From: Octopus sinensis
Taxonomy: Eukaryota
NCBI RefSeq assembly: GCF_006345805.1
Contig: NW_021827048.1
Span: 1-11,235 of the forward strand
Reading direction: 5' to 3'
DNA: 11,235 nucleotides
Shown: piece after piece, positions 421-9,552 of the stretch
How the letters are laid out: each line of letters opens with the position of its first letter
Numbering within the stretch: position 1 is the first letter of the stretch
Notes under the pieces: generated by a model
The model's input: the letters and a program-made list of their open reading frames with translations, nothing else
Databases searched by the model: none
Told to the model about the DNA's origin: nothing
Made by a program: the position numbers and the translations under genes

Positions 421-435
421 ATGAAGATGATCCAA
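421..435 (+). CDS. IL17: Putative first coding exon of the IL-17-like gene (MKMIQ)
   Basis: aaaaATG AAG ATG ATC CAA|GTAAGA: A at -3, strong donor at 436, phase 0. This matches the phase-0 acceptor at 5542/5543 and yields MKMIQFLFKFAIFLLNFTSIVLSA, a typical signal peptide (basic N-region, hydrophobic core, small residues at the cleavage site). Confidence 0.7.
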
Positions 436-500
436 GTAAGAATATTCAATTTATATATACTCTCATCTCTTATGTTTAACTTGCTTGAATTATAGTGGGG

Positions 501-778
501 CATCACCTTCAAAGTTTTAGCTGCAGAAGATCAAACCCAGTACCTAATTTTTGAAGTCGGGTATATATGCTATGGCCCGAGTTCAAATTCCGCCGAGGTC
601 GACTTTGCCTTTCATCCTTTCGGGGTCGATAAATTAAGTACCAGTTACGCACTGAGGTCGATGTAATCGACTTAATCCCTTTGTCCGTCCTTGTTTGTCC
701 CCTCTGTGTTTAGCCCCTTGTGGGTAGTAAAGAAATATATATATATATGCTATGGCCCTTCTCTCGTTAAAACGCTGA
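501..778 (-). mobile_element. Old, diverged 3' fragment of the main SINE family, interrupted by the younger SINE at 579-741
   Basis: With 579-741 and one TSD removed, the sequence cacc..ttttag..acccagtacctaatttttgaagtcgggtatatatgctatggcccttctctcgttaaaacgctga aligns by eye with cacc..tttag..acccgggacttattcttttttgtaagcccagtacttatgctatcggtctcttttgccgaaccgctaa of the copy at 943-1358. Confidence 0.5.
579..741 (+). mobile_element. 5'-truncated tRNA-derived SINE of a second family, with a 17-bp target-site duplication
   Basis: Begins at a Pol III B-box-like GAGTTCAAATTC. Central GGTCGACTTTGCCTTTCATCCTTTCGGGGTCGATAAATTAAGTACCAG resembles, from memory, the Nin-type SINE central domain. Ends in AAAGAAATATA. 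Flanked by identical TATATATGCTATGGCCC at 562-578 and 742-758. Confidence 0.85.
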
Positions 779-855
779 TACTACAGAAAAAAATGTCAAG
801 CGCATTGGGGTGTGACAAACACAAGCGTACACATACCCACGCGTTCATACAAACG

Positions 856-857
<2 letters not shown>

Positions 858-935
<78 letters not shown>

Positions 936-938
936 GTT
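858..938. repeat. Compound (TA)n-(TG)n microsatellite
   Basis: Directly visible; source of the YIYIYI/VCVCV pseudo-ORFs. Confidence 0.95.
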
Positions 939-942
939 TGTA

Positions 943-1358
943 TACTCTTTTATACTCTTTTACTTGTTTCAGTCCTTTGACTGCGGCCATGCTGGAGCAC
1001 CGCCTTTAGTCGAGCGACTCGACCCGGGACTTATTCTTTTTTTGTAAGCCCAGTACTTATGCTATCGGTCTCTTTTGCCGAACCGCTAAGTAACGGGGAC
1101 ATAAAACACAACACCAGCCTCGGTTGTCAAGCAATGCTAGGGGGACAAACACAGACACACAAACAAACACACATACATATATATACACATATATACGACA
1201 GGCTTCTTTCAGTTTCCGTCTACCAAATCCACTCACAAGGCATTGGTCGGCCCGGGGCTATAGCAGAAGACACTTGCCCAAGATGCACGGCAGTGAGACT
1301 GAACCCGGAACCATGTTTTTTGTTAGCAAGCTACTTACCACACAGCCACTCCTGCGCC
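943..1358 (-). mobile_element. Full-length tRNA-derived SINE (main family, copy 1)
   Basis: Reverse complement closely matches 7912-8265 and 9114-9552. Head GGCGCAGGAGTGGCTGTGTGGTAAG with A-box and B-box-like GGTTCAGT; CORE-like TCTTGGGCAAGTGTCTT; internal TA/TG microsatellite; tail of AAAAGAGTA repeats. Resembles octopus tRNA-derived SINEs from memory. Confidence 0.92.
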
Positions 1359-1436
1359 TATGTATATATATATATGTATGTATATATATATATAATATAT
1401 ATAATATATATATATATTATTATATATATATATATA

Positions 1437-1483
<47 letters not shown>

Positions 1484-1484
1484 T
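1359..1484. repeat. Imperfect (TA)n microsatellite
   Basis: Directly visible, abutting the SINE head. Confidence 0.95.
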
Positions 1485-1672
1485 GACGTGATAAAATACA
1501 GGAGGATCGATTAATTGTAATTTTCTTTAGCATATTCCCCTCTCATATTCATACACATACTGCAGCAGAACTTTGTTTTTCTAAGTCCTATAAAAGAACT
1601 CGGAAGGTTGAGCTTTCAACCAGACCTTTCGTGACACCCTTAAAGTCAGGAAATATTCAGCATCTCACAGTT

Positions 1673-2000
1673 TGTATGTACGTATGCATGTATGTATGTA
1701 TGTATGTATATATATGTGTGTGTGTGAGAGGGGGTGGGCTTGTATGTGTACATATATATATGTGCATATATATATATATGTATATATGTGTATATGTATA
1801 TATATATGTATGTGTGTATCTGTATATATGTGTGTGTATGTATATGTGCATATGTGTGTGTATATATATATGATGTATGTGAATACGTATTTATTAATTA
1901 TATTGTTTGTATCTTCCCATACACTCACGTATGTGTATGTGTGAGAGTGTGTGTGTATGCTTTTGTGCATGCATGTGTGTATGTATGTGTGCATATTCTT
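1673..2000. repeat. Degenerate TA/TG/TATG low-complexity tract
   Basis: Directly visible; source of five overlapping pseudo-ORFs. Confidence 0.9.
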
Positions 2001-2440
2001 ATGTGTTAGGTGTATACATATATATTCCTTGTGAATTGATAATAAATTTTTCCTTCATATATTTGTTTCTTATTCATTTTTGAATGTCTTCCCTAATCAG
2101 GGCAATTTTTGAGTGGGGATTTTTTAAAAATAAATCATATATGTTCAAATATAGAATCAATTTAAATATAGTTTTGTTATTTAGCTAGAAGCTTCTAATA
2201 ATATTTTTTTCCGTTTTCTCTATAAATATGTATACACCCGACATTCTATGGGTTTTTTTCCTATTAGTGAACGTGGTGTTTATATCTGCTAGACACACGT
2301 GTTTTTGTTTACATTATATTTCGTCTCGATCTTTTACTATTTTTAAGTATATCCGTCAGACTTTTTAAGTTATAGCTTTCTGCACAAATAGACTTCCATA
2401 CACATTGGTATGTCTTTCTTTTTCTTTAATATTTTCCCTA

Positions 2441-2606
2441 TTACTCCATGTTTTTTCCTTACTCTTTTTTCCTTACTTGTTTCAGTCAGTTGACTGCGGC
2501 CATGCTAGAGCACCGCCTTTAGTCGAGCAACTCGACCCCGGGACTTATTCTTTGTAAGCCCAGTGCTTATTCTATCGGTCTCCTTTGCCGAACCGCTAAG
2601 TGACGG
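2441..2606 (-). mobile_element. 5'-truncated 3' fragment of the main SINE family (copy 2)
   Basis: 2473-2606 is near-identical to 959-1096 and to the reverse complement of 9398-9532. A degenerate ttactc...ttttttcc tail repeat occupies 2441-2472. Confidence 0.9.
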
Positions 2607-2683
2607 TGAATTTTATTAATAACTTTTTGATGCTTTTCCTAAAATTTCCTCTCACTGATGAGAATGACAATGCATACCTCAAA

Positions 2684-2685
<2 letters not shown>

Positions 2686-2724
<39 letters not shown>

Positions 2725-2734
2725 TTATTATTAT

Positions 2735-2766
<32 letters not shown>

Positions 2767-2793
2767 TATTATATTATTATTATTATTATTTTA

Positions 2794-2829
<36 letters not shown>

Positions 2830-2886
2830 CATCATCATCATCATCATCATCATCATTATTATAATAATAATATATAATATTATTAA

Positions 2887-2970
<84 letters not shown>

Positions 2971-3006
2971 CATCATCATCATCATCATCATCATCATTAT
3001 TATTAT
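2686..3006. repeat. Compound (ATT)n/(ATC)n trinucleotide microsatellite
   Basis: Long ATT runs with three ATC blocks starting at 2735 (10 units), 2828 (9) and 2969 (9). Source of the poly-I/L/Y/M pseudo-ORFs. Confidence 0.95.
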
Positions 3007-3186
3007 TTTTAAATATTTGTATTGTCTTTTGAAAAGTGCGTATGCATTGAATTCAATTTTGTATTAAATCCAAGTTTGATTTTAACATATAATCTTTCCA
3101 TTTTTATACTTGTTTATGGTATTTTTATACCTATAAAGAATTTTTCATTTATATATGTTTATATGTATGCATCATGGGATTCGACA

Positions 3187-3290
3187 CAGTTTCCGTCTGC
3201 CAAATTCGCCTACAATGCTTTGGTCGAGCCGGTGTGAGACAGGAAGCGACTTACCCATTGTGCCACGCGATGTGGTGAATTCTGAAACAT
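3187..3290 (-). mobile_element. Diverged internal fragment of the main SINE family or an older relative
   Basis: cagtttccgtctgccaaattcgcctacaatgctttggtcgagccgg...gaagcgacttacccattgtgccacgc aligns with cagtttccgtctaccaaatccactcacaaggcattggtcggcccgg...gaagacacttgcccaagatgc at 1210-1286. Confidence 0.75.
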
Positions 3291-3721
3291 AAAACTGTAT
3301 ATTCGCATACATTAATGTATGAAAATATCCATACATTAATATTATTACATGCTTTATGATATTTCCATTATTAAGCATACATATTTTTGGAATGTTAATA
3401 AGAAAATGATAAACGTAGACAAAGCATGTAGCTATGCTCAAAGGAACATAACCTCCATCAGTCAAGCGACTTTTGATGAATATTTAGCTTGCAGTTGATT
3501 TCTAGGGCACATTTAGGTATGATATACATAACTCTGGTTTATGTACAAGAAATTACTTATTTGATTTGCATATTGTCTTTTATATCATAGGGGTACTAAT
3601 TTAATTAGAATTACAGAATGGCAGATGAGTTCAAATGAATCGATTCTTCGTAATGCTTTGTAGAGTATATTTACAAACGCTTCAAAACATTTTAACTATG
3701 GAAAGCTTCCAAAAACCATAA

Positions 3722-3808
<87 letters not shown>

Positions 3809-3818
3809 GTATCTATCC

Positions 3819-3878
<60 letters not shown>

Positions 3879-3909
3879 CCTGTCTGTCTGTCTATCTATC
3901 TATCTATCT
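3722..3909. repeat. (ATCT)n tetranucleotide microsatellite in two blocks
   Basis: Directly visible; interrupted near 3808-3822 and by (GTCT) units near 3881-3891. Confidence 0.95.
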
Positions 3910-4384
3910 TGTAATAATCTGATGGAATAGACGACGATGATAAAGATTTTACAAATCTTAAGACATTATTTTCATAGAGAGGATTGTCGGTGTGTTTATT
4001 TAAAATCACTGAATCAATGACCGAAATATATTAGTTCCTGCGATGAATGCTGTATTCCAACGAGAAGATATATATATCTCCATATAACTACAATTTATTT
4101 CTCTTTTTCCATCACCTTCCTCTCCTCCCCACCAAATACACAGAGAAATACATACATAAATCAATCAGCCCTTGCACTGGTCAAAAGCGATAAACATCCC
4201 TGTGTTAACCATCTATTAATGTTATATCGCTTGAAGTAATGAATCCAGACAGATGATGAACCCGGCGCCCACAGGTACTACGGATTACACTGTAACTCAG
4301 TATCGATTTATGAGGAAGTAGCCTGAGGATGGTTGGAAATGACACAAATATGTGAAAACACCTGTACTCTTTCACTACAACTTT

Positions 4385-4583
4385 GTCTTACTCTTCCCGT
4401 TGCACCTGCGTTTCAAATGGTTAGCCTTGCCACACTCTGTGTTACGCTGAATCTCCCCGAGAACTACGTTAAGGGTACACGTGTCTGTGGAGCGCTCAGC
4501 CACTTGCACGTTAATATCACGAGCAGGCTGCTCCGTTGATTGGATCAACTGGAACCCTCGACGTCGTAACCGACGGAGTGCCA
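4385..4583 (+). mobile_element. Probable 3' fragment of a third interspersed retroposon family
   Basis: GC- and CpG-rich block in an AT-rich intron, ending in GTCGTAACCGACGGAGTGCCA followed by a TGATA/TA-repeat tail. It resembles an abundant octopus repeat end from memory only; there is no second copy in the window. Confidence 0.45.
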
Positions 4584-4668
4584 TGATATATGATATGATA
4601 TATATATACATCTGTATATATATATGTATATATATATATGTATATATATATATATGTATATATTATAT

Positions 4669-4876
4669 ATTACATATAATAGAAATATTAAAATTAAAAT
4701 AATAATAATATACCAATGATTAAGTAGATTGCAAAATAATAATAAAAACGTATATATTTGGTAGAATAACTATATTATATTATATTTAGTGAAATTTGAT
4801 TTAGTATTTCTAAATTGAATTTTCCTTCTTTAAGCTGGGAATAATATTCCCTCAAATAATTATTATATATATATGA

Positions 4877-4923
<47 letters not shown>

Positions 4924-4959
4924 ACGTATATATATATGCATGCATACACACACACAAAC

Positions 4960-5053
<94 letters not shown>

Positions 5054-5108
5054 ATGTTTGTGTGTGTGTATGCATGCATATATATATAGCGTATATATAT
5101 ATATATAT

Positions 5109-5160
<52 letters not shown>

Positions 5161-5358
5161 TATATATATAATTATTTGAGGGAATATTATTCCAGCTTAA
5201 AGGGAAAATTCAATTTAGAAATACTAAATCAATTTCACTAAATATAATATAATATAGTTATTCTACCAAATATATACGTTTTTATTATTATTTTGCAAAA
5301 TACTTAATCATTGGTATATTATTATTATTTTTATTTTAATATTTCTATTATATGTAAT
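4669..5358. repeat. ~690-bp near-perfect inverted duplication (palindrome) centred on a TA tract
   Basis: 4669-4863 is the reverse complement of 5168-5358 with 3 substitutions and 4 indel bases. The inner marker TGCATGCATACACACACACAAACA (4937-4960) is mirrored exactly at 5055-5078. Centre ~5008. Confidence 0.95.
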
Positions 5359-5409
5359 TTTCTAGATGTAATTTAATTTTGAATGGATAAAATGTTTCTT
5401 TTTCTAATT

Positions 5410-5410
<1 letters not shown>

Positions 5411-5476
<66 letters not shown>

Positions 5477-5488
5477 GTAATAATATAT
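5411..5488. repeat. (TA)n microsatellite
   Basis: Directly visible, ending ~30 bp upstream of the branch point. Confidence 0.95.
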
Positions 5489-5542
5489 GATAAATTGAAA
5501 GTGAAATCCATCACTCGACTAACATATTTTCTTTATTTGCAG

Positions 5543-6070
5543 TTTCTCTTCAAGTTTGCCATATTCCTCTTGAACTTCACCTCGATTGTGTTGTCAGCCG
5601 CAATTCCGAACCAGTGTGAAATACCAACGAATCTGAAAGTCCAATATGAGAGTCTCTCCAATGCAGCCATTGGCAATAATTTTTTTCTACCAGCTGAAAT
5701 GTCTCCAGCCGGAAGTAAACAATCACTGACCGACGGGGATAAAACTTGCCCAACATCTACTGCTTCTACAAATAACATACGCGAGCGCTCTACCTGTCCT
5801 TGGTACCTGACCATAACTCATGATACAACAATTTTCCCTCCATCACGTACTGAAGTTATGTGTCGATGTACAAAGTGTTTAGACACTGACAGTGGCAACC
5901 ATGAATGTGTGATGGTTTATACTCCAATGACTGTCCTGAAACGTACAGGCGAATGTGTTGATGGACTGTACGTTTATAAACCAAGTGTGATTAAAGTGGC
6001 CACAGCCTGTGCGTGTGCACGGAAGGTTGATGTCATTGAGAAGGAAACTGAGCATGACTATGAGTCATAG
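5543..6070 (+). CDS. IL17: Interleukin-17 family cytokine, main coding exon (175 aa + TAG)
   Basis: RSTCPW (5786-5803; vertebrate RSxSPW), FPxxxxEVMCRCxKC, CVxVYxxMxVLKR, GLYVY and VATACAC (cystine-knot CxC), plus a hydrophobic signal-peptide segment at the exon start. The track's start at 5495 is an intronic TTG; the real boundary is CAG|TTT at 5542/5543. The symbol denotes the family, not orthology to a vertebrate IL17A-F. Confidence 0.93.
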   Translation, partial: FLFKFAIFLLNFTSIVLSAAIPNQCEIPTNLKVQYESLSNAAIGNNFFLPAEMSPAGSKQSLTDGDKTCPTSTASTNNIRERSTCPWYLTITHDTTIFPPSRTEVMCRCTKCLDTDSGNHECVMVYTPMTVLKRTGECVDGLYVYKPSVIKVATACACARKVDVIEKETEHDYES

Positions 6071-6170
6071 CAAATGTTAAAATAATTAATTGTACACTGC
6101 GTATCCCGCAAGAATTTTTCATAGTTTTATGAAATTTGATGTACACCATTATGTGGTGATTAATGGATGG

Positions 6171-6270
6171 ATGCATGCATGCATGCATACATGCATACAC
6201 CACATACATACATACATACATACATACATACATACATACATACATACATACTACATACATACATACATAT
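6171..6270. repeat. (ATGC)n-(TACA)n microsatellite
   Basis: Directly visible, 100 bp after the stop codon. Confidence 0.95.
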
Positions 6271-6455
6271 ATTAATATGTATGTGTGTGTATTTGCTTTA
6301 ACATACGCTTTATAACATCGACATTTGCATATTTAAAACAAAAATCTTGTTGCAATTTTATTTAATCGCCTGTAAGTTATTTCATTATATCTGTACATAT
6401 GAAATCATTCACAAAATCATTTACGAATCATTTAACCACACAAAATGCTATGTCA

Positions 6456-6790
6456 CCTTTTATTTAAACACACACGTGCCTTTTATTTAAACACACACGC
6501 GCCTTTTATTTAAAGATACACGTACCTTTTATTTAAACACACACGCACTTTATATTTAAACACACACGTATCTTTTATTTAAACACACACGCACTTTATA
6601 TTTAAACACACACGCGCCTTTTATTTAAACACACACGTGCCTTTTATTTAAACACACACACACCTTTTATTTAAACACACACACACACACCTTTTATTTA
6701 AACACACACGTACCTGTTATTTAAACACACACACCTTTTATTTAAATACACACACACCTTTTATTTAAAGAAGCACACACACACACACGT
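6456..6790. repeat. Minisatellite, 14 copies of a ~23-bp unit, consensus CCTTTTATTTAAACACACACGYR
   Basis: Units start at 6456, 6479, 6502, 6525, 6548, 6571, 6594, 6617, 6640, 6663, 6690, 6713, 6734 and 6757. The period is exactly 23 for the first nine units, then varies with CA slippage. Confidence 0.97.
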
Positions 6791-6983
6791 TGACGCAGTC
6801 AGACGCATACAGGCACAATTTCGCACATACCTACAGATTTATGTGTATACTTCCTATTTTCCTACTTGACGCCGATTAGTTAGCTGAAATTAGAAGGACC
6901 AGACTTTTCCCATACATTTAAGGATCAGAATGTGTCAATTGACGCAAAGATGTTTTCCAATTTGAAAGGAAATGAAAAAAAAA

Positions 6984-6997
6984 ATAAATAAATAAAG
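6984..6997 (+). terminator. Candidate polyadenylation signal (three overlapping AATAAA)
   Basis: First canonical AATAAA I can find after the stop codon at 6070, at 6984, 6988 and 6992. It follows an A-run and could be incidental. Confidence 0.4.
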
Positions 6998-7861
6998 GAA
7001 ATGACGAGGTAGAAAACTTTTATTAAATACATAAATCTATTGAATTTTATGATTTCATGATGATATTAGTCACAATAGTTTGATACTTTGAATGAAATAT
7101 ATCCTTACAAAATAAAAAGATATTTATAGAAATTCAAATAATTCATCTCGATGTCTTAGCATGTATGTCTGACTTTATGTGTAGAGGTGAATGTTTCCTC
7201 ATTAAGGTGTTCGATAGTACATGAACAGCCGTGAGATGAATCACTATGACGTTCTTCAACAACTTTTTGAATATATTCCCTTTGGACCGGCGACTGAGTT
7301 GCAAACACTTGTGTATGCTACCCAGACGTTAATAAGAGCAACATCTCAAATATTATATTAAATAAAAGAAAAACGTGCATTGGTCATCGTCTACTGCTTG
7401 CTTTGCTTAAATGAAGCTTTGCCATTTGGTCAAGCACGTTTACGCCTACCATAGTTTTACTATAAAAATATTACGGTGTCAAATTTCTTCTGGGAGTTAT
7501 TCTCAGAAGGAACTTCTACATGTTGATGTAAGGTACAGAAAACAAAACAGAGTTTGATTTTTCGCACTGATATAATGTGTGACAGTAGGCTTTGTGGATT
7601 TCATAACCACATTATCATGGACTGGTTTCACCTGTTTTATTGCTTCCAGTAGAATTGTTCTGACTGAACTGCGGTTTTGTTTTGCGAACTGTAAAGGCTT
7701 TGCAATTACTGAATATCTAAAATGTTGTCACATGTATTTATAAACAAAAAACAAGTGCAAGGTTCAAAAGTTGACCATGCGTTAATTGATGTGTGCGGTC
7801 CTTATGACAATATGTGCTTATCATTTTTACAGTTGGTGCAAACACCCTATAATTATAGAAC

Positions 7862-8082
7862 CTCGTGAATTCCACTTTTTTCTCTTTCTCATATATATAT
7901 ATATATATATAGGCGCAGGAGTGGCTGTGTGGTAAGTAGCTTGCTAACCAACCACATGGCTGCGGGTTCAGTCCCACTGCGTGGCATCTTGGGCAAGTGT
8001 CTTCTGCTATAGCCCCGGGCCGACCAATGCCTTGTGAGTGGATTTGGTAGACGGAAACTGAAAGAAGCCTGTCGTATATATG

Positions 8083-8113
<31 letters not shown>

Positions 8114-8263
8114 CTGTGTTTGTCCCCCTAGCATTGCTTGGCAACCGATGCTGGTGTGTTTACGTCCCCGTCACTTACAAAGAATAAGTCCCGGGGTCGA
8201 TTTGCTCGACTAAAAGCGGTGCTCCAGCATGGCCGCAGTCAAATGATTGAAACAAGTAAAAGA

Positions 8264-8335: not shown

Positions 8336-9113
8336 ATTATATATATACATTTCTGATTTGATGTGTGAGGAAGCAATACTAAACAGGTGAAATGCTAACA
8401 TCACTGCATTGACAGAATTTCGGTTCTTCGATTCAAAATTATGACATTATAAAAGGGTGTGTGCTTCATTTACACAAGTGTAAATTGCCATTTTCCCTGT
8501 AAAGTGATCTGTAATATAATTAGATGATCTCACATACATAAACCCAACACACACATAGATATATACTCATAGACATACGCACACACACACACACATACGC
8601 TCCCTCATATATTCGTATTTATTATATAAAACATTGTATATATTTATGTTAGTTTATATACGCACTCATGTAACATATAAATTGAATAAATATATCTCTA
8701 TAACTATTTATATTTTTGTATTATATATATTTCTCTGGATAGAAATATATATACATTCATTTGTATTACATCATTAAAATTTTAATTTATTTCTTTTATA
8801 TTGTAATAAAACAACATTTGAAAAACACTCGGCTGTTTTACTTTCAATTCTTACCCTTCTATTTCCTTGAATCATTCTGTAGGGGGTCGATTTATTATCT
8901 GCATAACCGATTTCATTTGGGTATATTGCTCGTCTTACTACATTAGATTCCTTTGATGTATGTATGTATGCCGCGCCATTGTAATTATTCAAGACGAATT
9001 ATAATTACCGCAGCTCTGCTCTGCTTATTGATCATGTTAATGAATATCATATGCCTTTATTTACATCCTATAATTTCTCTCCATTTTAAACATGTGTCTA
9101 CAAAAAATTTAAA

Positions 9114-9286
9114 AGTGACTGTGTGGTAAGTAGCTTGCTAACCAACCACATGGTTCCGGGTTCAGTTCCACTGCGTGGCATCTTGGGCAAGTGTCTTCTG
9201 CTATAGCCCCGGGCCGACCAATGCCTTGTGAGTGGATTTGGTAGACGGAAACTGAAAGAAGCCTGTCGTATATATGTATATATATG

Positions 9287-9334
<48 letters not shown>

Positions 9335-9552
9335 TTTGTGTGTCTGTGTTTGTCCCCCTAGCATTGCTTGACAACCGATGCTAGTGTGTTTACGTCCCCG
9401 TCACTTAGCGGTTCGGCAAAAGAGACCGATAGAATAAGTACTGGGCTTACAAAGAATAAGTCCCGGGGTCGATTTGCTCGACTAAAGGCGGTGCTCCAGC
9501 ATGGCCGCAGTCAAAATGACTGAAACAAGTAAAAGAGTAAAGAGTAAAGAGT
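9114..9552 (+). mobile_element. tRNA-derived SINE, main family copy 4, missing ~8 nt at the 5' end
   Basis: Near-identical to copy 3 and to the reverse complement of copy 1; tail AAAAGAGT AAAGAGT AAAGAGT. Confidence 0.92.

What the first reader, a model, noticed from the sequence alone, without database searches (positions are those of the whole stretch)
6456..6790. Minisatellite that arrays AU-rich-element nonamers in the probable IL-17 3' UTR
Seen: 12 of 14 units carry TTATTTAAA on the sense strand, and the two variants (6548, 6594) keep ATTTA. Most units also contain TTTTAT. Each AU block is spaced by a CA-rich linker. The array begins 386 nt after the stop and precedes the first canonical AATAAA (6984). 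Another TTATTTAAT lies at 6358-6366. Established: UUAUUUA(U/A)(U/A) is the functional ARE nonamer that destabilises cytokine mRNAs via TTP/HuR-type proteins; UUUUAU is a CPE-like motif. Inference: tandem amplification of an ARE could make mRNA stability depend on copy number, a VNTR-tuned control on a cytokine. Units 4-5 and 6-7 show a dimer-level duplication, suggesting recent expansion.
Basis: partly seen in the sequence, partly recalled or inferred. Interest (0 to 1): 0.75.

Follow-up and report, generated by a model that had tools for sequence, protein, structure and literature searches.

The report
Young AU-rich minisatellite behind octopus IL-17
A 23-base unit carrying an mRNA-instability-like motif has been copied 14 times in a row just downstream of an Octopus sinensis IL-17-like cytokine gene, where a sister species has one copy; it is a real, recent repeat expansion, but nothing yet shows that it is transcribed or controls the gene.

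Summary
Window 6455-6781 is a 14-unit, 23-bp minisatellite (TRF score 435). Twelve units carry TTATTTAAA and all 14 carry ATTTA. It starts 386 nt after the stop codon of an intact two-exon IL-17-like gene of Octopus sinensis (Pfam IL17, 54 bits).

The main new fact is comparative. The O. bimaculoides orthologue has one copy of the unit at the same site, next to a short (CA)n tract, so O. sinensis has 295 extra bp.

- Outside the array the nonamer is at chance frequency.
- Ten other octopus IL-17 genes show no ATTTA enrichment after their stops (54 observed, 48 expected).
- The unit is absent from about 180 kb of other octopus DNA.
- The 3' flank is no more conserved than the intron or intergenic DNA (all about 0.89-0.92).
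- No unit has the preferred tristetraprolin (TTP) core UAUUUAU.
- The same flank carries two other species-specific microsatellite expansions.

No AATAAA or ATTAAA lies before the array in O. sinensis, so it is probably in the 3' UTR. No transcript evidence could be obtained.

Best reading: a young slippage-born minisatellite that multiplied an ARE-like motif and is probably neutral. Modest interest.

The parts
421..435 (+). Exon 1 of the IL-17-like gene: ATG AAG ATG ATC CAA (MKMIQ), followed by the GTAAGA splice donor
   Evidence: Pattern search. It matches the N-terminus of annotated protein P0001. The same structure occurs in O. bimaculoides at L001 10001.
436..5542 (+). Intron of 5.1 kb, swollen by microsatellites ((TA)n, (ATT)111, (TATC)47, (TA)155); ends in ttatttgcag
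   Evidence: In the O. bimaculoides orthologue the whole coding span, both exons and the intron, is 1,820 bp.
5543..6070 (+). Exon 2: the rest of the signal peptide, the IL-17 cystine-knot domain and the TAG stop (6068-6070)
   Evidence: The translation equals P0001 residues 6-180. Pfam IL17 scores 54.4 bits. Best solved-structure match is IL-17F, E = 2.5e-6. dN/dS against O. bimaculoides is 0.26.
6071..6454 (+). Proximal 3' flank, the putative first part of the 3' UTR; it has no AATAAA or ATTAAA
   Evidence: Ungapped identity to O. bimaculoides is 0.923 +/- 0.018 over 6254-6475.
6163..6269 (+). (ATGC)n/(CATA)n microsatellite, 80 bp longer than in O. bimaculoides
   Evidence: insertion at 6174-6253.
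6358..6366 (+). Solitary TTATTTAAT nonamer, not conserved in O. bimaculoides (TTACTTAAT)
6455..6781 (+). The minisatellite: 14 units of consensus ACCTTTTATTTAAACACACACGY. Each unit is an AU block (CUUUUAUUUAAA) plus a CA/CG linker. The array runs into a terminal (CA)n tract ending at 6788.
   Evidence: TRF, unit parsing and alignment. The RNA is essentially unstructured: -25 kcal/mol over 361 nt, z = -1.55.
6478..6772 (+). The 295 bp (12.8 units) present in O. sinensis and absent from the O. bimaculoides orthologous site, which has a single unit
   Evidence: Pairwise alignments. The single copy is at L001 12125.
6983..6996 (+). Three overlapping AATAAA hexamers inside an O. sinensis-specific (AAAT)n expansion; the first canonical poly(A) hexamers after the stop
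   Evidence: gap in O. bimaculoides.
7022..7027 (+). ATTAAA conserved in both species, followed by the best-conserved stretch of the flank (0.96-0.98 at 7027-7102); candidate ancestral poly(A) signal
7111..7116 (+). AATAAA conserved in both species; alternative poly(A) signal candidate

Best explanation
This is a lineage-specific minisatellite. An ancestral single-copy segment, an AU block (CTTTTATTTAAA) abutting a short (CA)n microsatellite about 390 nt after the stop codon of an IL-17-like gene, was amplified in tandem in the Octopus sinensis lineage to 14 units. The likely process was replication slippage or unequal exchange between the flanking CA tracts, with at least one later two-unit duplication. 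Units then diverged mainly by transitions in the CpG-containing linker and by changes in CA-tract length.

The array probably lies inside a 3' UTR of about 0.95-1.05 kb that ends at the AATAAA/ATTAAA cluster at 6983-7027 or at 7111 (inferred, not shown). The transcript would then carry 12 spaced UUAUUUAAA nonamers (14 AUUUA) in unstructured, CA-spaced RNA. From established ARE biology, the expected consequence is some recruitment of ARE-binding proteins (ZFP36/TTP family, ELAV/HuR, AUF1) and faster deadenylation.

The evidence favours an unselected by-product of a genome that expands simple repeats everywhere, not a purpose-built regulator.

Shown: the array, its anatomy, the IL-17 gene, the single-copy state in the sister species, and the lack of family-wide ARE enrichment or extra conservation. 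Inferred: the direction of change, the slippage mechanism, UTR inclusion, and any effect on the mRNA.
For: - Array and motifs.
- Single unit at the orthologous site in O. bimaculoides, with well-aligned flanks on both sides and a clean 295-bp gap.
- The same 900-bp flank has two more O. sinensis-specific tandem expansions, 80 bp of (CATA)n and 10 bp of (AAAT)n. The intron is also full of microsatellites, and TRF lists 52 rows for the 11 kb window.
- Unit variation is concentrated in the linker (CGYG to CACA-type transitions, CA-length changes). The 13-nt AU block shows 4 inferred substitution events in 182 nt, which suggests the array is younger than the species split at about 0.10 substitutions per site.
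- The nonamer is at chance level outside the array.
- Ten other octopus IL-17 genes have ATTTA at composition expectation (54 against 48.2) and 0-1 nonamers.
- Ungapped identity of the 3' flank (0.923 and 0.904) is indistinguishable from intron (0.88-0.90), upstream (0.898) and distal downstream DNA (0.89-0.91).
- For UTR inclusion: there is no AATAAA or ATTAAA from +1 to +912 in O. sinensis. Paralogues commonly have their first hexamer 400-970 nt after the stop.
- Molluscs have a ZFP36 gene (PMC3546996).
Against: - With only two species the direction is not proven. O. bimaculoides could have collapsed an older array.
- Mean unit-to-unit identity (0.87) is no higher than the between-species identity, so an older origin cannot be excluded if linker sites are counted.
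- This is the only high-copy minisatellite with a complex unit in about 121 kb of octopus DNA scanned with TRF. It is therefore less ordinary than the surrounding microsatellites.
- The AU block is much better kept than the linker, which could also reflect selection on the motif.
- The ancestral single nonamer is conserved between the species.
- No transcript data were available, so UTR inclusion is unverified.
Confidence: 0.6

Rival explanations
1. One reading: the array is a functional, selected cis-element. It is a tandem battery of AREs in the IL-17 3' UTR that recruits ZFP36/TTP- or HuR-type proteins, so that mRNA half-life, and with it cytokine output, scales with repeat number (a VNTR rheostat).
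For: - 12 perfect UUAUUUAAA nonamers and 14 AUUUA.
- The AU block is nearly invariant while the linker varies.
- The RNA is unstructured, so the motifs would be accessible.
- There is no canonical poly(A) hexamer before the array.
- The ancestral single nonamer is conserved in O. bimaculoides.
- Copy number differs 14 to 1 between sister species.
- Vertebrate IL-17A mRNA is ARE-regulated; the CTLA-8 and HuR papers are cited in PMC8353272 and PMC8484758.
- Longer (AT)n alleles in the CTLA4 3' UTR shorten mRNA half-life (PMC555850).
- A ZFP36 gene exists in molluscs (PMC3546996).
Against: - There is no ARE enrichment behind 10 other octopus IL-17 genes.
- The 3' flank shows no excess conservation.
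- The second nonamer, at 6358, is not conserved.
- 0 of 14 units have the preferred TTP core UAUUUAU; they read UAUUUAA (PMC8484758).
- The motifs are spaced at 23 nt and do not overlap as in potent class II AREs.
- Hypermutable CpGs and CA slippage explain the linker-biased variation without selection.
- Neighbouring neutral-looking repeat expansions lie in the same flank.
- No expression or polymorphism data exist.
Confidence: 0.15
2. The array is not part of the mRNA. Cleavage and polyadenylation occur upstream of 6455 at a non-canonical signal, and the minisatellite is plain intergenic DNA with no RNA-level role.
For: - The array starts at +386, about the median octopus 3' UTR length of 350-380 nt (PMC9699675).
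- O. bimaculoides has ATTAAA at +15 and +248, ahead of its single unit. O. sinensis has near-cognate ATTAAT and ATGAAA there.
- There is no drop in conservation anywhere that would mark a longer UTR.
- No contig other than the window carries this exact protein in the collection searched.
Against: - O. sinensis has none of the 12 common hexamer variants I listed between +1 and +385; only the AAAATA string at 6079 turned up in that scan.
- Most paralogues also lack a canonical hexamer in their first 400-600 nt.
- A conserved ATTAAA at 7022, followed by the best-conserved 75 nt of the flank, is a plausible true site.
Confidence: 0.2
3. The element acts on the other strand or at the DNA level. On the minus strand each unit reads GTGTGTGTTTAAATAAAAGG, that is AATAAA plus a GU-rich tract. 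The array could be a stack of poly(A)/termination modules for a convergent transcript. Alternatively it could be an array of TATA-like or forkhead-like (TAAACA) protein-binding sites acting as a downstream regulatory or matrix-attachment element.
For: Read directly from the sequence: the 11 units that read CTTTTATT contain TTTATT, the complement of AATAAA. All 14 contain TATTTAAA, and 11 contain TAAACA.
Against: - There is no credible ORF or gene on the minus strand in the 4.4 kb to the right.
- No gene is called within 10 kb downstream of the O. bimaculoides orthologue.
- O. bimaculoides manages with one unit.
- There is no conservation signal.
- The motif matches are short and AT-rich in a 68% AT window.
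Confidence: 0.05

Closest known systems
AU-rich elements (AREs) of cytokine mRNAs, e.g. the TNF UUAUUUAUU repeats and the AREs of vertebrate IL-17A (CTLA-8)
   Same: It lies downstream of a cytokine stop codon. It has multiple AUUUA pentamers in a U-rich context. Twelve copies fit the functional nonamer UUAUUUA(U/A)(U/A). The RNA is predicted to be single-stranded.
   Different: The copies are identical tandem duplicates of one ancestral site at a 23-nt spacing. They are not overlapping (class II) or independently evolved motifs. They end in AA, so the preferred TTP core UAUUUAU is absent. They are not shared by paralogues, and neither transcription nor activity is shown.
The CTLA4 3' UTR (AT)n microsatellite: longer alleles give less stable mRNA
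   Same: It is an AU-rich tandem repeat of variable length in the 3' region of an immune gene. This is the precedent for a repeat number that tunes mRNA stability (PMC555850).
   Different: CTLA4 has a dinucleotide repeat with documented human polymorphism and half-life data. Here the unit is a complex 23-mer, the difference is between species (1 against 14), and no functional data exist.
3' UTR minisatellites/VNTRs such as the 40-bp DAT1/SLC6A3 VNTR
   Same: It is a minisatellite with a unit of tens of bp placed after the stop codon, has variant units, and has been proposed to modulate expression (PMC1325255 and PMC549191, listed).
   Different: The DAT1 unit is not an ARE and its polymorphism is established. 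Within-species polymorphism here is unknown.
CA-rich elements bound by hnRNP L
   Same: Each unit's linker is a (CA)3-7 run, the kind of sequence hnRNP L binds in some UTRs and introns.
   Different: This is motif resemblance only. The CA tract is more simply the microsatellite that seeded the duplication.

Membership tests
Minisatellite / VNTR | Head-to-tail tandem copies of a 10-100 bp unit | tested here: met
   Period 23, 13.7 copies, 84% matches, TRF score 435; 14 parsed units.
Minisatellite / VNTR | Copy number varies between genomes | tested here: inconclusive
   Between species the count is 14 in O. sinensis and 1 in O. bimaculoides. Within-species polymorphism, the actual VNTR criterion, could not be tested because only one O. 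sinensis haplotype was available.
Minisatellite / VNTR | Locus-specific array as opposed to a dispersed satellite or TE-borne repeat | tested here: met
   Allowing up to 3 mismatches, the unit is absent from about 180 kb of other octopus IL-17 loci except the orthologous single copy. There are 0 hits in metagenome contigs. A whole-genome scan was not possible.
AU-rich element (ARE) | AUUUA pentamers / UUAUUUA(U/A)(U/A) nonamer in a U-rich context | tested here: met
   14 ATTTA and 12 TTATTTAAA in the array. The total of 18 against 4.97 expected is due entirely to the array.
AU-rich element (ARE) | Location within the 3' UTR of the mature mRNA | not testable with these tools
   No transcript data. 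For: no AATAAA or ATTAAA from +1 to +912. Against: the array starts at +386, about the median octopus UTR length (PMC9699675), and O. bimaculoides has ATTAAA at +15 and +248.
AU-rich element (ARE) | Preferred ZFP36/TTP core UAUUUAU, or overlapping nonamers (class II) | tested here: not met
   There are 0 TATTTAT in the 1 kb after the stop; units read UAUUUAA. The nonamers sit 23 nt apart and do not overlap. TTP preference is from PMC8484758.
AU-rich element (ARE) | Confers instability or translational control in an assay | not testable with these tools
   Needs reporter decay assays.
AU-rich element (ARE) | Evolutionary maintenance (conserved in orthologues, recurrent in paralogues) | tested here: inconclusive
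   One nonamer is conserved in O. bimaculoides and the one at 6358 is not. Paralogues are not enriched. Flank identity equals background.
Cytoplasmic polyadenylation element (CPE) | UUUUAU close to the poly(A) hexamer; the usual distance of about 100 nt is from my own knowledge | tested here: not met
   The last TTTTAT is at 6759 and the first AATAAA at 6983, 224 nt away. The motif is part of the same AU block, so it is not an independent feature.
Interleukin-17 family (the gene upstream) | IL17 domain above the Pfam gathering score, with similarity to solved IL-17 structures | tested here: met
   PF06083 scores 54.4 bits against a cut-off of 24. IL-17F matches at E = 2.5e-6 and IL-17A at about 3e-3. 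The protein is 100% identical to annotated O. sinensis IL-17-like protein P0001. dN/dS is 0.26.

The most novel reading that the evidence does not exclude
In the O. sinensis lineage, a single ancestral ARE in the 3' UTR of one member of the expanded octopus IL-17 family was amplified into a 12-14-site battery that is transcribed and bound by the mollusc ZFP36/ELAV machinery. This would give this paralogue a much shorter, copy-number-dependent mRNA half-life. It would be a repeat-length rheostat on an invertebrate cytokine and a way for recently duplicated cytokine genes to diverge in expression kinetics.
Probability: 0.12. Interest if true: 0.65.

Novelty: new member of a known kind. Interest (0 to 1): 0.3.

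Why it matters
If the array is transcribed and active, it would be a clean natural experiment. Two sister octopus species carry 1 and 14 copies of an ARE-like motif behind orthologous IL-17 genes. That contrast could show how tandem-repeat dynamics rewire post-transcriptional control of a cytokine in an invertebrate, and how members of a 30-plus-gene IL-17 expansion diverge in expression kinetics.

If it is neutral, as I think more likely, it is one more example of the strong tendency of octopus genomes to expand simple repeats. It is also a caution against motif-based inference: a short AU-rich motif inside a repeat unit is multiplied by copying, not by selection.

Tried and rejected
- **Dispersed satellite or TE-borne repeat: rejected for the sample available.** The unit (up to 3 mismatches, both strands) is absent from nine other octopus loci, about 180 kb, except the orthologous single copy. 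A two-unit pattern had 0 hits in metagenome contigs, which is weak evidence because that collection holds little animal DNA.
- **Shared feature of IL-17 paralogues: rejected.** Paralogue 3' flanks share only microsatellite similarity with this one and carry no ARE excess.
- **Convergent minus-strand gene using the AATAAA/GU-rich reading of the unit:** no ORF or called gene found.
- **Structured RNA: rejected.** No Rfam match in the window, and the fold has z = -1.55.
- **tRNA-derived element:** no tRNA found.
- **Locating the transcript end by conservation: failed.** Identity is about 0.9 everywhere.
- **Finding an O. vulgaris orthologue to set the direction of the expansion: failed.** P0034/L002 is a paralogue; only the exon matches, at 82%, and the flanks are unrelated.
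- **Transcript contigs:** the one Logan contig I fetched, L003 for P0024, is genomic DNA with an intron acceptor, not cDNA.
- **Literature:** I found no open-access report of octopus IL-17 cDNA 3' UTRs or AREs.

Full report
**What the window is.** The 11,235-bp window is a whole unplaced scaffold of Octopus sinensis. The protein search returned a 180-aa 'interleukin 17-like protein [Octopus sinensis]' that is 100% identical to the query and whose longest contig is exactly 11,235 bases.
- Exon 1 is at 421-435 and encodes MKMIQ, followed by a GTAAGA donor.
- The intron is 5.1 kb, is packed with microsatellites and ends in ...ttatttgcag.
- Exon 2 is at 5543-6070, and its translation equals residues 6-180 of the annotated protein.
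- The product scores 54.4 bits on Pfam IL17 against a cut-off of 24. Its best solved relative is IL-17F, E = 2.5e-6.
- Against the O. bimaculoides orthologue (P0002, 88% identical over the 157-aa query; 87% over exon 2), dN/dS is 0.26, so the gene is under purifying selection and is presumably functional.
- Octopus genomes carry 31-36 IL-17 genes (PMC8353272).

**The observation.** Tandem Repeats Finder reports one array at 6454-6769 with period 23, 13.7 copies, 84% matches and score 435. I parsed 14 units between 6455 and 6781.
- Each unit is an AU block (C)CTTTTATTTAAA followed by a linker CACACACG(Y)(R).
- Twelve units carry TTATTTAAA, all 14 carry ATTTA and 11 carry TTTTAT.
- The two variants (starting 6547 and 6593) read CTTTATATTTAAA.
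- The array starts 386 nt after the stop. A solitary TTATTTAAT lies at 6358-6366, and the first AATAAA starts at 6983.
- The 46-bp blocks 6531-6576 and 6577-6622 differ at 3 positions, consistent with a two-unit duplication. The lag-46 signal is only slightly above lag 23 (0.892 against 0.868).

**Is it more than chance?** As a repeat, yes. As evidence for an ARE, no. TTATTTAWW occurs 18 times on both strands against 4.97 +/- 2.22 in shuffles. Outside the array there are 6 matches, which is the chance level. The motif count therefore reflects one sequence copied 13 more times, and each copy is not independent evidence.

**The orthologous site.** I fetched the O. bimaculoides orthologue (L001, chromosome CM046601.1) and aligned the 3' flanks.
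- The flanks align cleanly on both sides of the array.
- At the site itself O. bimaculoides has a single ...CATCTTTTATTTAAACACACACACACACACGCAC..., one unit abutting a short (CA)n tract (L001 12125).
- O. sinensis has 295 extra bases (6478-6772), which is 12.8 units.
- The same 900-bp flank holds two further O. sinensis-specific tandem expansions: 80 bp of (CATA)n at 6174-6253 and 10 bp of (AAAT)n at 6984-6993.
They do not exist in O. bimaculoides.

**How it arose (inference).** The unit boundaries fall in CA tracts and the ancestral copy sits against a CA microsatellite. This points to slippage or unequal exchange between CA runs as the amplifying mechanism.
- Variation among units is concentrated in the linker: CGCG, CGTG, CGCA, CGTA and CACA, all related by transitions at CpG, plus changes in CA length.
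- The 13-nt AU block shows 4 inferred substitution events in 182 nt.
- Set against a between-species divergence of about 0.10 per site, this fits an expansion after the species split.
- With only two species the direction is not proven. I could not retrieve an O. vulgaris orthologue, because P0034/L002 turned out to be a paralogue.

**Is it in the mRNA?** This is unresolved.
- For: O. sinensis has no AATAAA or ATTAAA from the stop to +912, and none of the common variant hexamers before the array.
- For: ten other octopus IL-17 genes typically have their first canonical hexamer 194-973 nt after the stop.
- For: a conserved ATTAAA at 7022 is followed by the best-conserved part of the flank, 0.96-0.98 at 7027-7102. 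A conserved AATAAA lies at 7111.
- Against: the median O. vulgaris 3' UTR is 350-380 nt (PMC9699675), and the array begins at +386.
- Against: O. bimaculoides has ATTAAA at +15 and +248, ahead of its single unit, where O. sinensis has ATTAAT and ATGAAA.
- No transcript-derived contig was obtainable. The one Logan contig I fetched is genomic.
- I put UTR inclusion at roughly 60-65%.

**Is there evidence of function?** I found none beyond the motif match.
- Ungapped identity between the two species is 0.923 +/- 0.018 before the array and 0.904 +/- 0.015 after it. It is 0.88-0.90 in the intron, 0.898 upstream and 0.89-0.91 further downstream. The 3' flank shows no detectable excess constraint.
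- In the 1 kb after the stop of ten other octopus IL-17 genes, ATTTA totals 54 against 48.2 expected from composition, with 0-1 nonamers each. ARE loading is not a property of this family in octopus.
- The solitary nonamer at 6358 is TTACTTAAT in O. bimaculoides.
- The preferred core of ZFP36/TTP is UAUUUAU (PMC8484758). No unit has it: all read UAUUUAA, and TATTTAT occurs 0 times in the 1 kb after the stop. The nonamers are 23 nt apart and do not overlap as in potent class II AREs.

Some points do favour a possible effect if the array is transcribed.
- The array RNA is essentially unstructured (-25 kcal/mol over 361 nt, z = -1.55).
- Molluscs have a ZFP36 gene (PMC3546996).
- The unit fits the broader functional nonamer.
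- There is a precedent for an AU-rich repeat whose length lowers mRNA stability in an immune gene, CTLA4 (AT)n (PMC555850).

**Alternatives examined.**
- Dispersed satellite: the unit is absent from about 180 kb of other octopus DNA and from metagenome contigs. It is also the only high-copy minisatellite with a complex unit in the roughly 121 kb I scanned with TRF; the other long-period hits are compound dinucleotide repeats.
- Minus-strand reading: in the 11 units that read CTTTTATT, the minus strand gives AATAAA plus a GU-rich tract. No minus-strand ORF lies in the 4.4 kb to the right, and no gene is called within 10 kb downstream in O. bimaculoides.
- Known RNA families and tRNAs: none found.

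**Verdict.**
- The finding is a real, locus-specific, evolutionarily recent minisatellite sitting behind an intact IL-17-like gene.
- It multiplies an ARE-like nonamer from 1 to 12 copies relative to the sister species.
- It is a new member of known kinds: 3'-flank minisatellites and AU-rich repeats in immune-gene UTRs.
- The most likely reading (0.6) is a neutral slippage product that probably rides in the 3' UTR.
It is directly testable, because nature supplies a 1-copy and a 14-copy orthologue pair.
- Interest is modest at 0.3.

Noticed in passing
window 946-1486 (+), 7889-8134 (-), 9098-9548 (-); also L001 5970-6401, 9222-9419 and 18934-19171, and several places in L002: A dispersed repeat of about 430 bp, bordered by TG/TA microsatellite, occurs three times in the window and repeatedly in other octopus loci at 70-90% identity. 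Its spurious ORFs share the string RQASFSFRLPNPLTRHWSARGYSRRHLPKM. It is probably a SINE-like or MITE-like element. ARAGORN found no tRNA in the window.
   Followed up: partly
window 6983-6996: The first canonical AATAAA hexamers after the IL-17 stop codon were created by an O. sinensis-specific (AAAT)n expansion and are absent from O. bimaculoides. A microsatellite may thus have created a new poly(A) signal about 35 nt upstream of the conserved ATTAAA at 7022.
   Followed up: partly
window 436-5542 against L001 10016-11290: The single intron is 5.1 kb in O. sinensis. In O. bimaculoides the whole coding span, both exons and the intron, is 1,820 bp. The difference is largely simple repeats ((TA)60, (ATT)111, (TATC)47, (TA)155) plus an inserted copy of the dispersed repeat.
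   Followed up: partly
L002 9935-10408 (O. vulgaris OX597814.1): A complete IL-17 exon 2 (77% identical to the window protein) starts 66 bp upstream of the annotated gene range 10001-17386 for the 140-aa protein P0034. That model therefore looks truncated or chimeric. A second IL-17 exon lies on the opposite strand at 18791-18303.
   Followed up: no
window 5543-6070 against L001 11296-11817: Synonymous divergence of the coding exon (dS 0.236, from about 121 sites) is about twice the divergence of the surrounding non-coding DNA (about 0.10-0.12). This may be sampling noise, CpG effects, or alignable non-coding DNA being biased towards conserved pieces.
   Followed up: no
window 421-435 and L001 10001-10015: The gene has a tiny first exon encoding five residues, with the whole IL-17 domain in exon 2. 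This is the layout described for sea-urchin SpIL17-1 and SpIL17-4a genes (PMC5457136).
   Followed up: no
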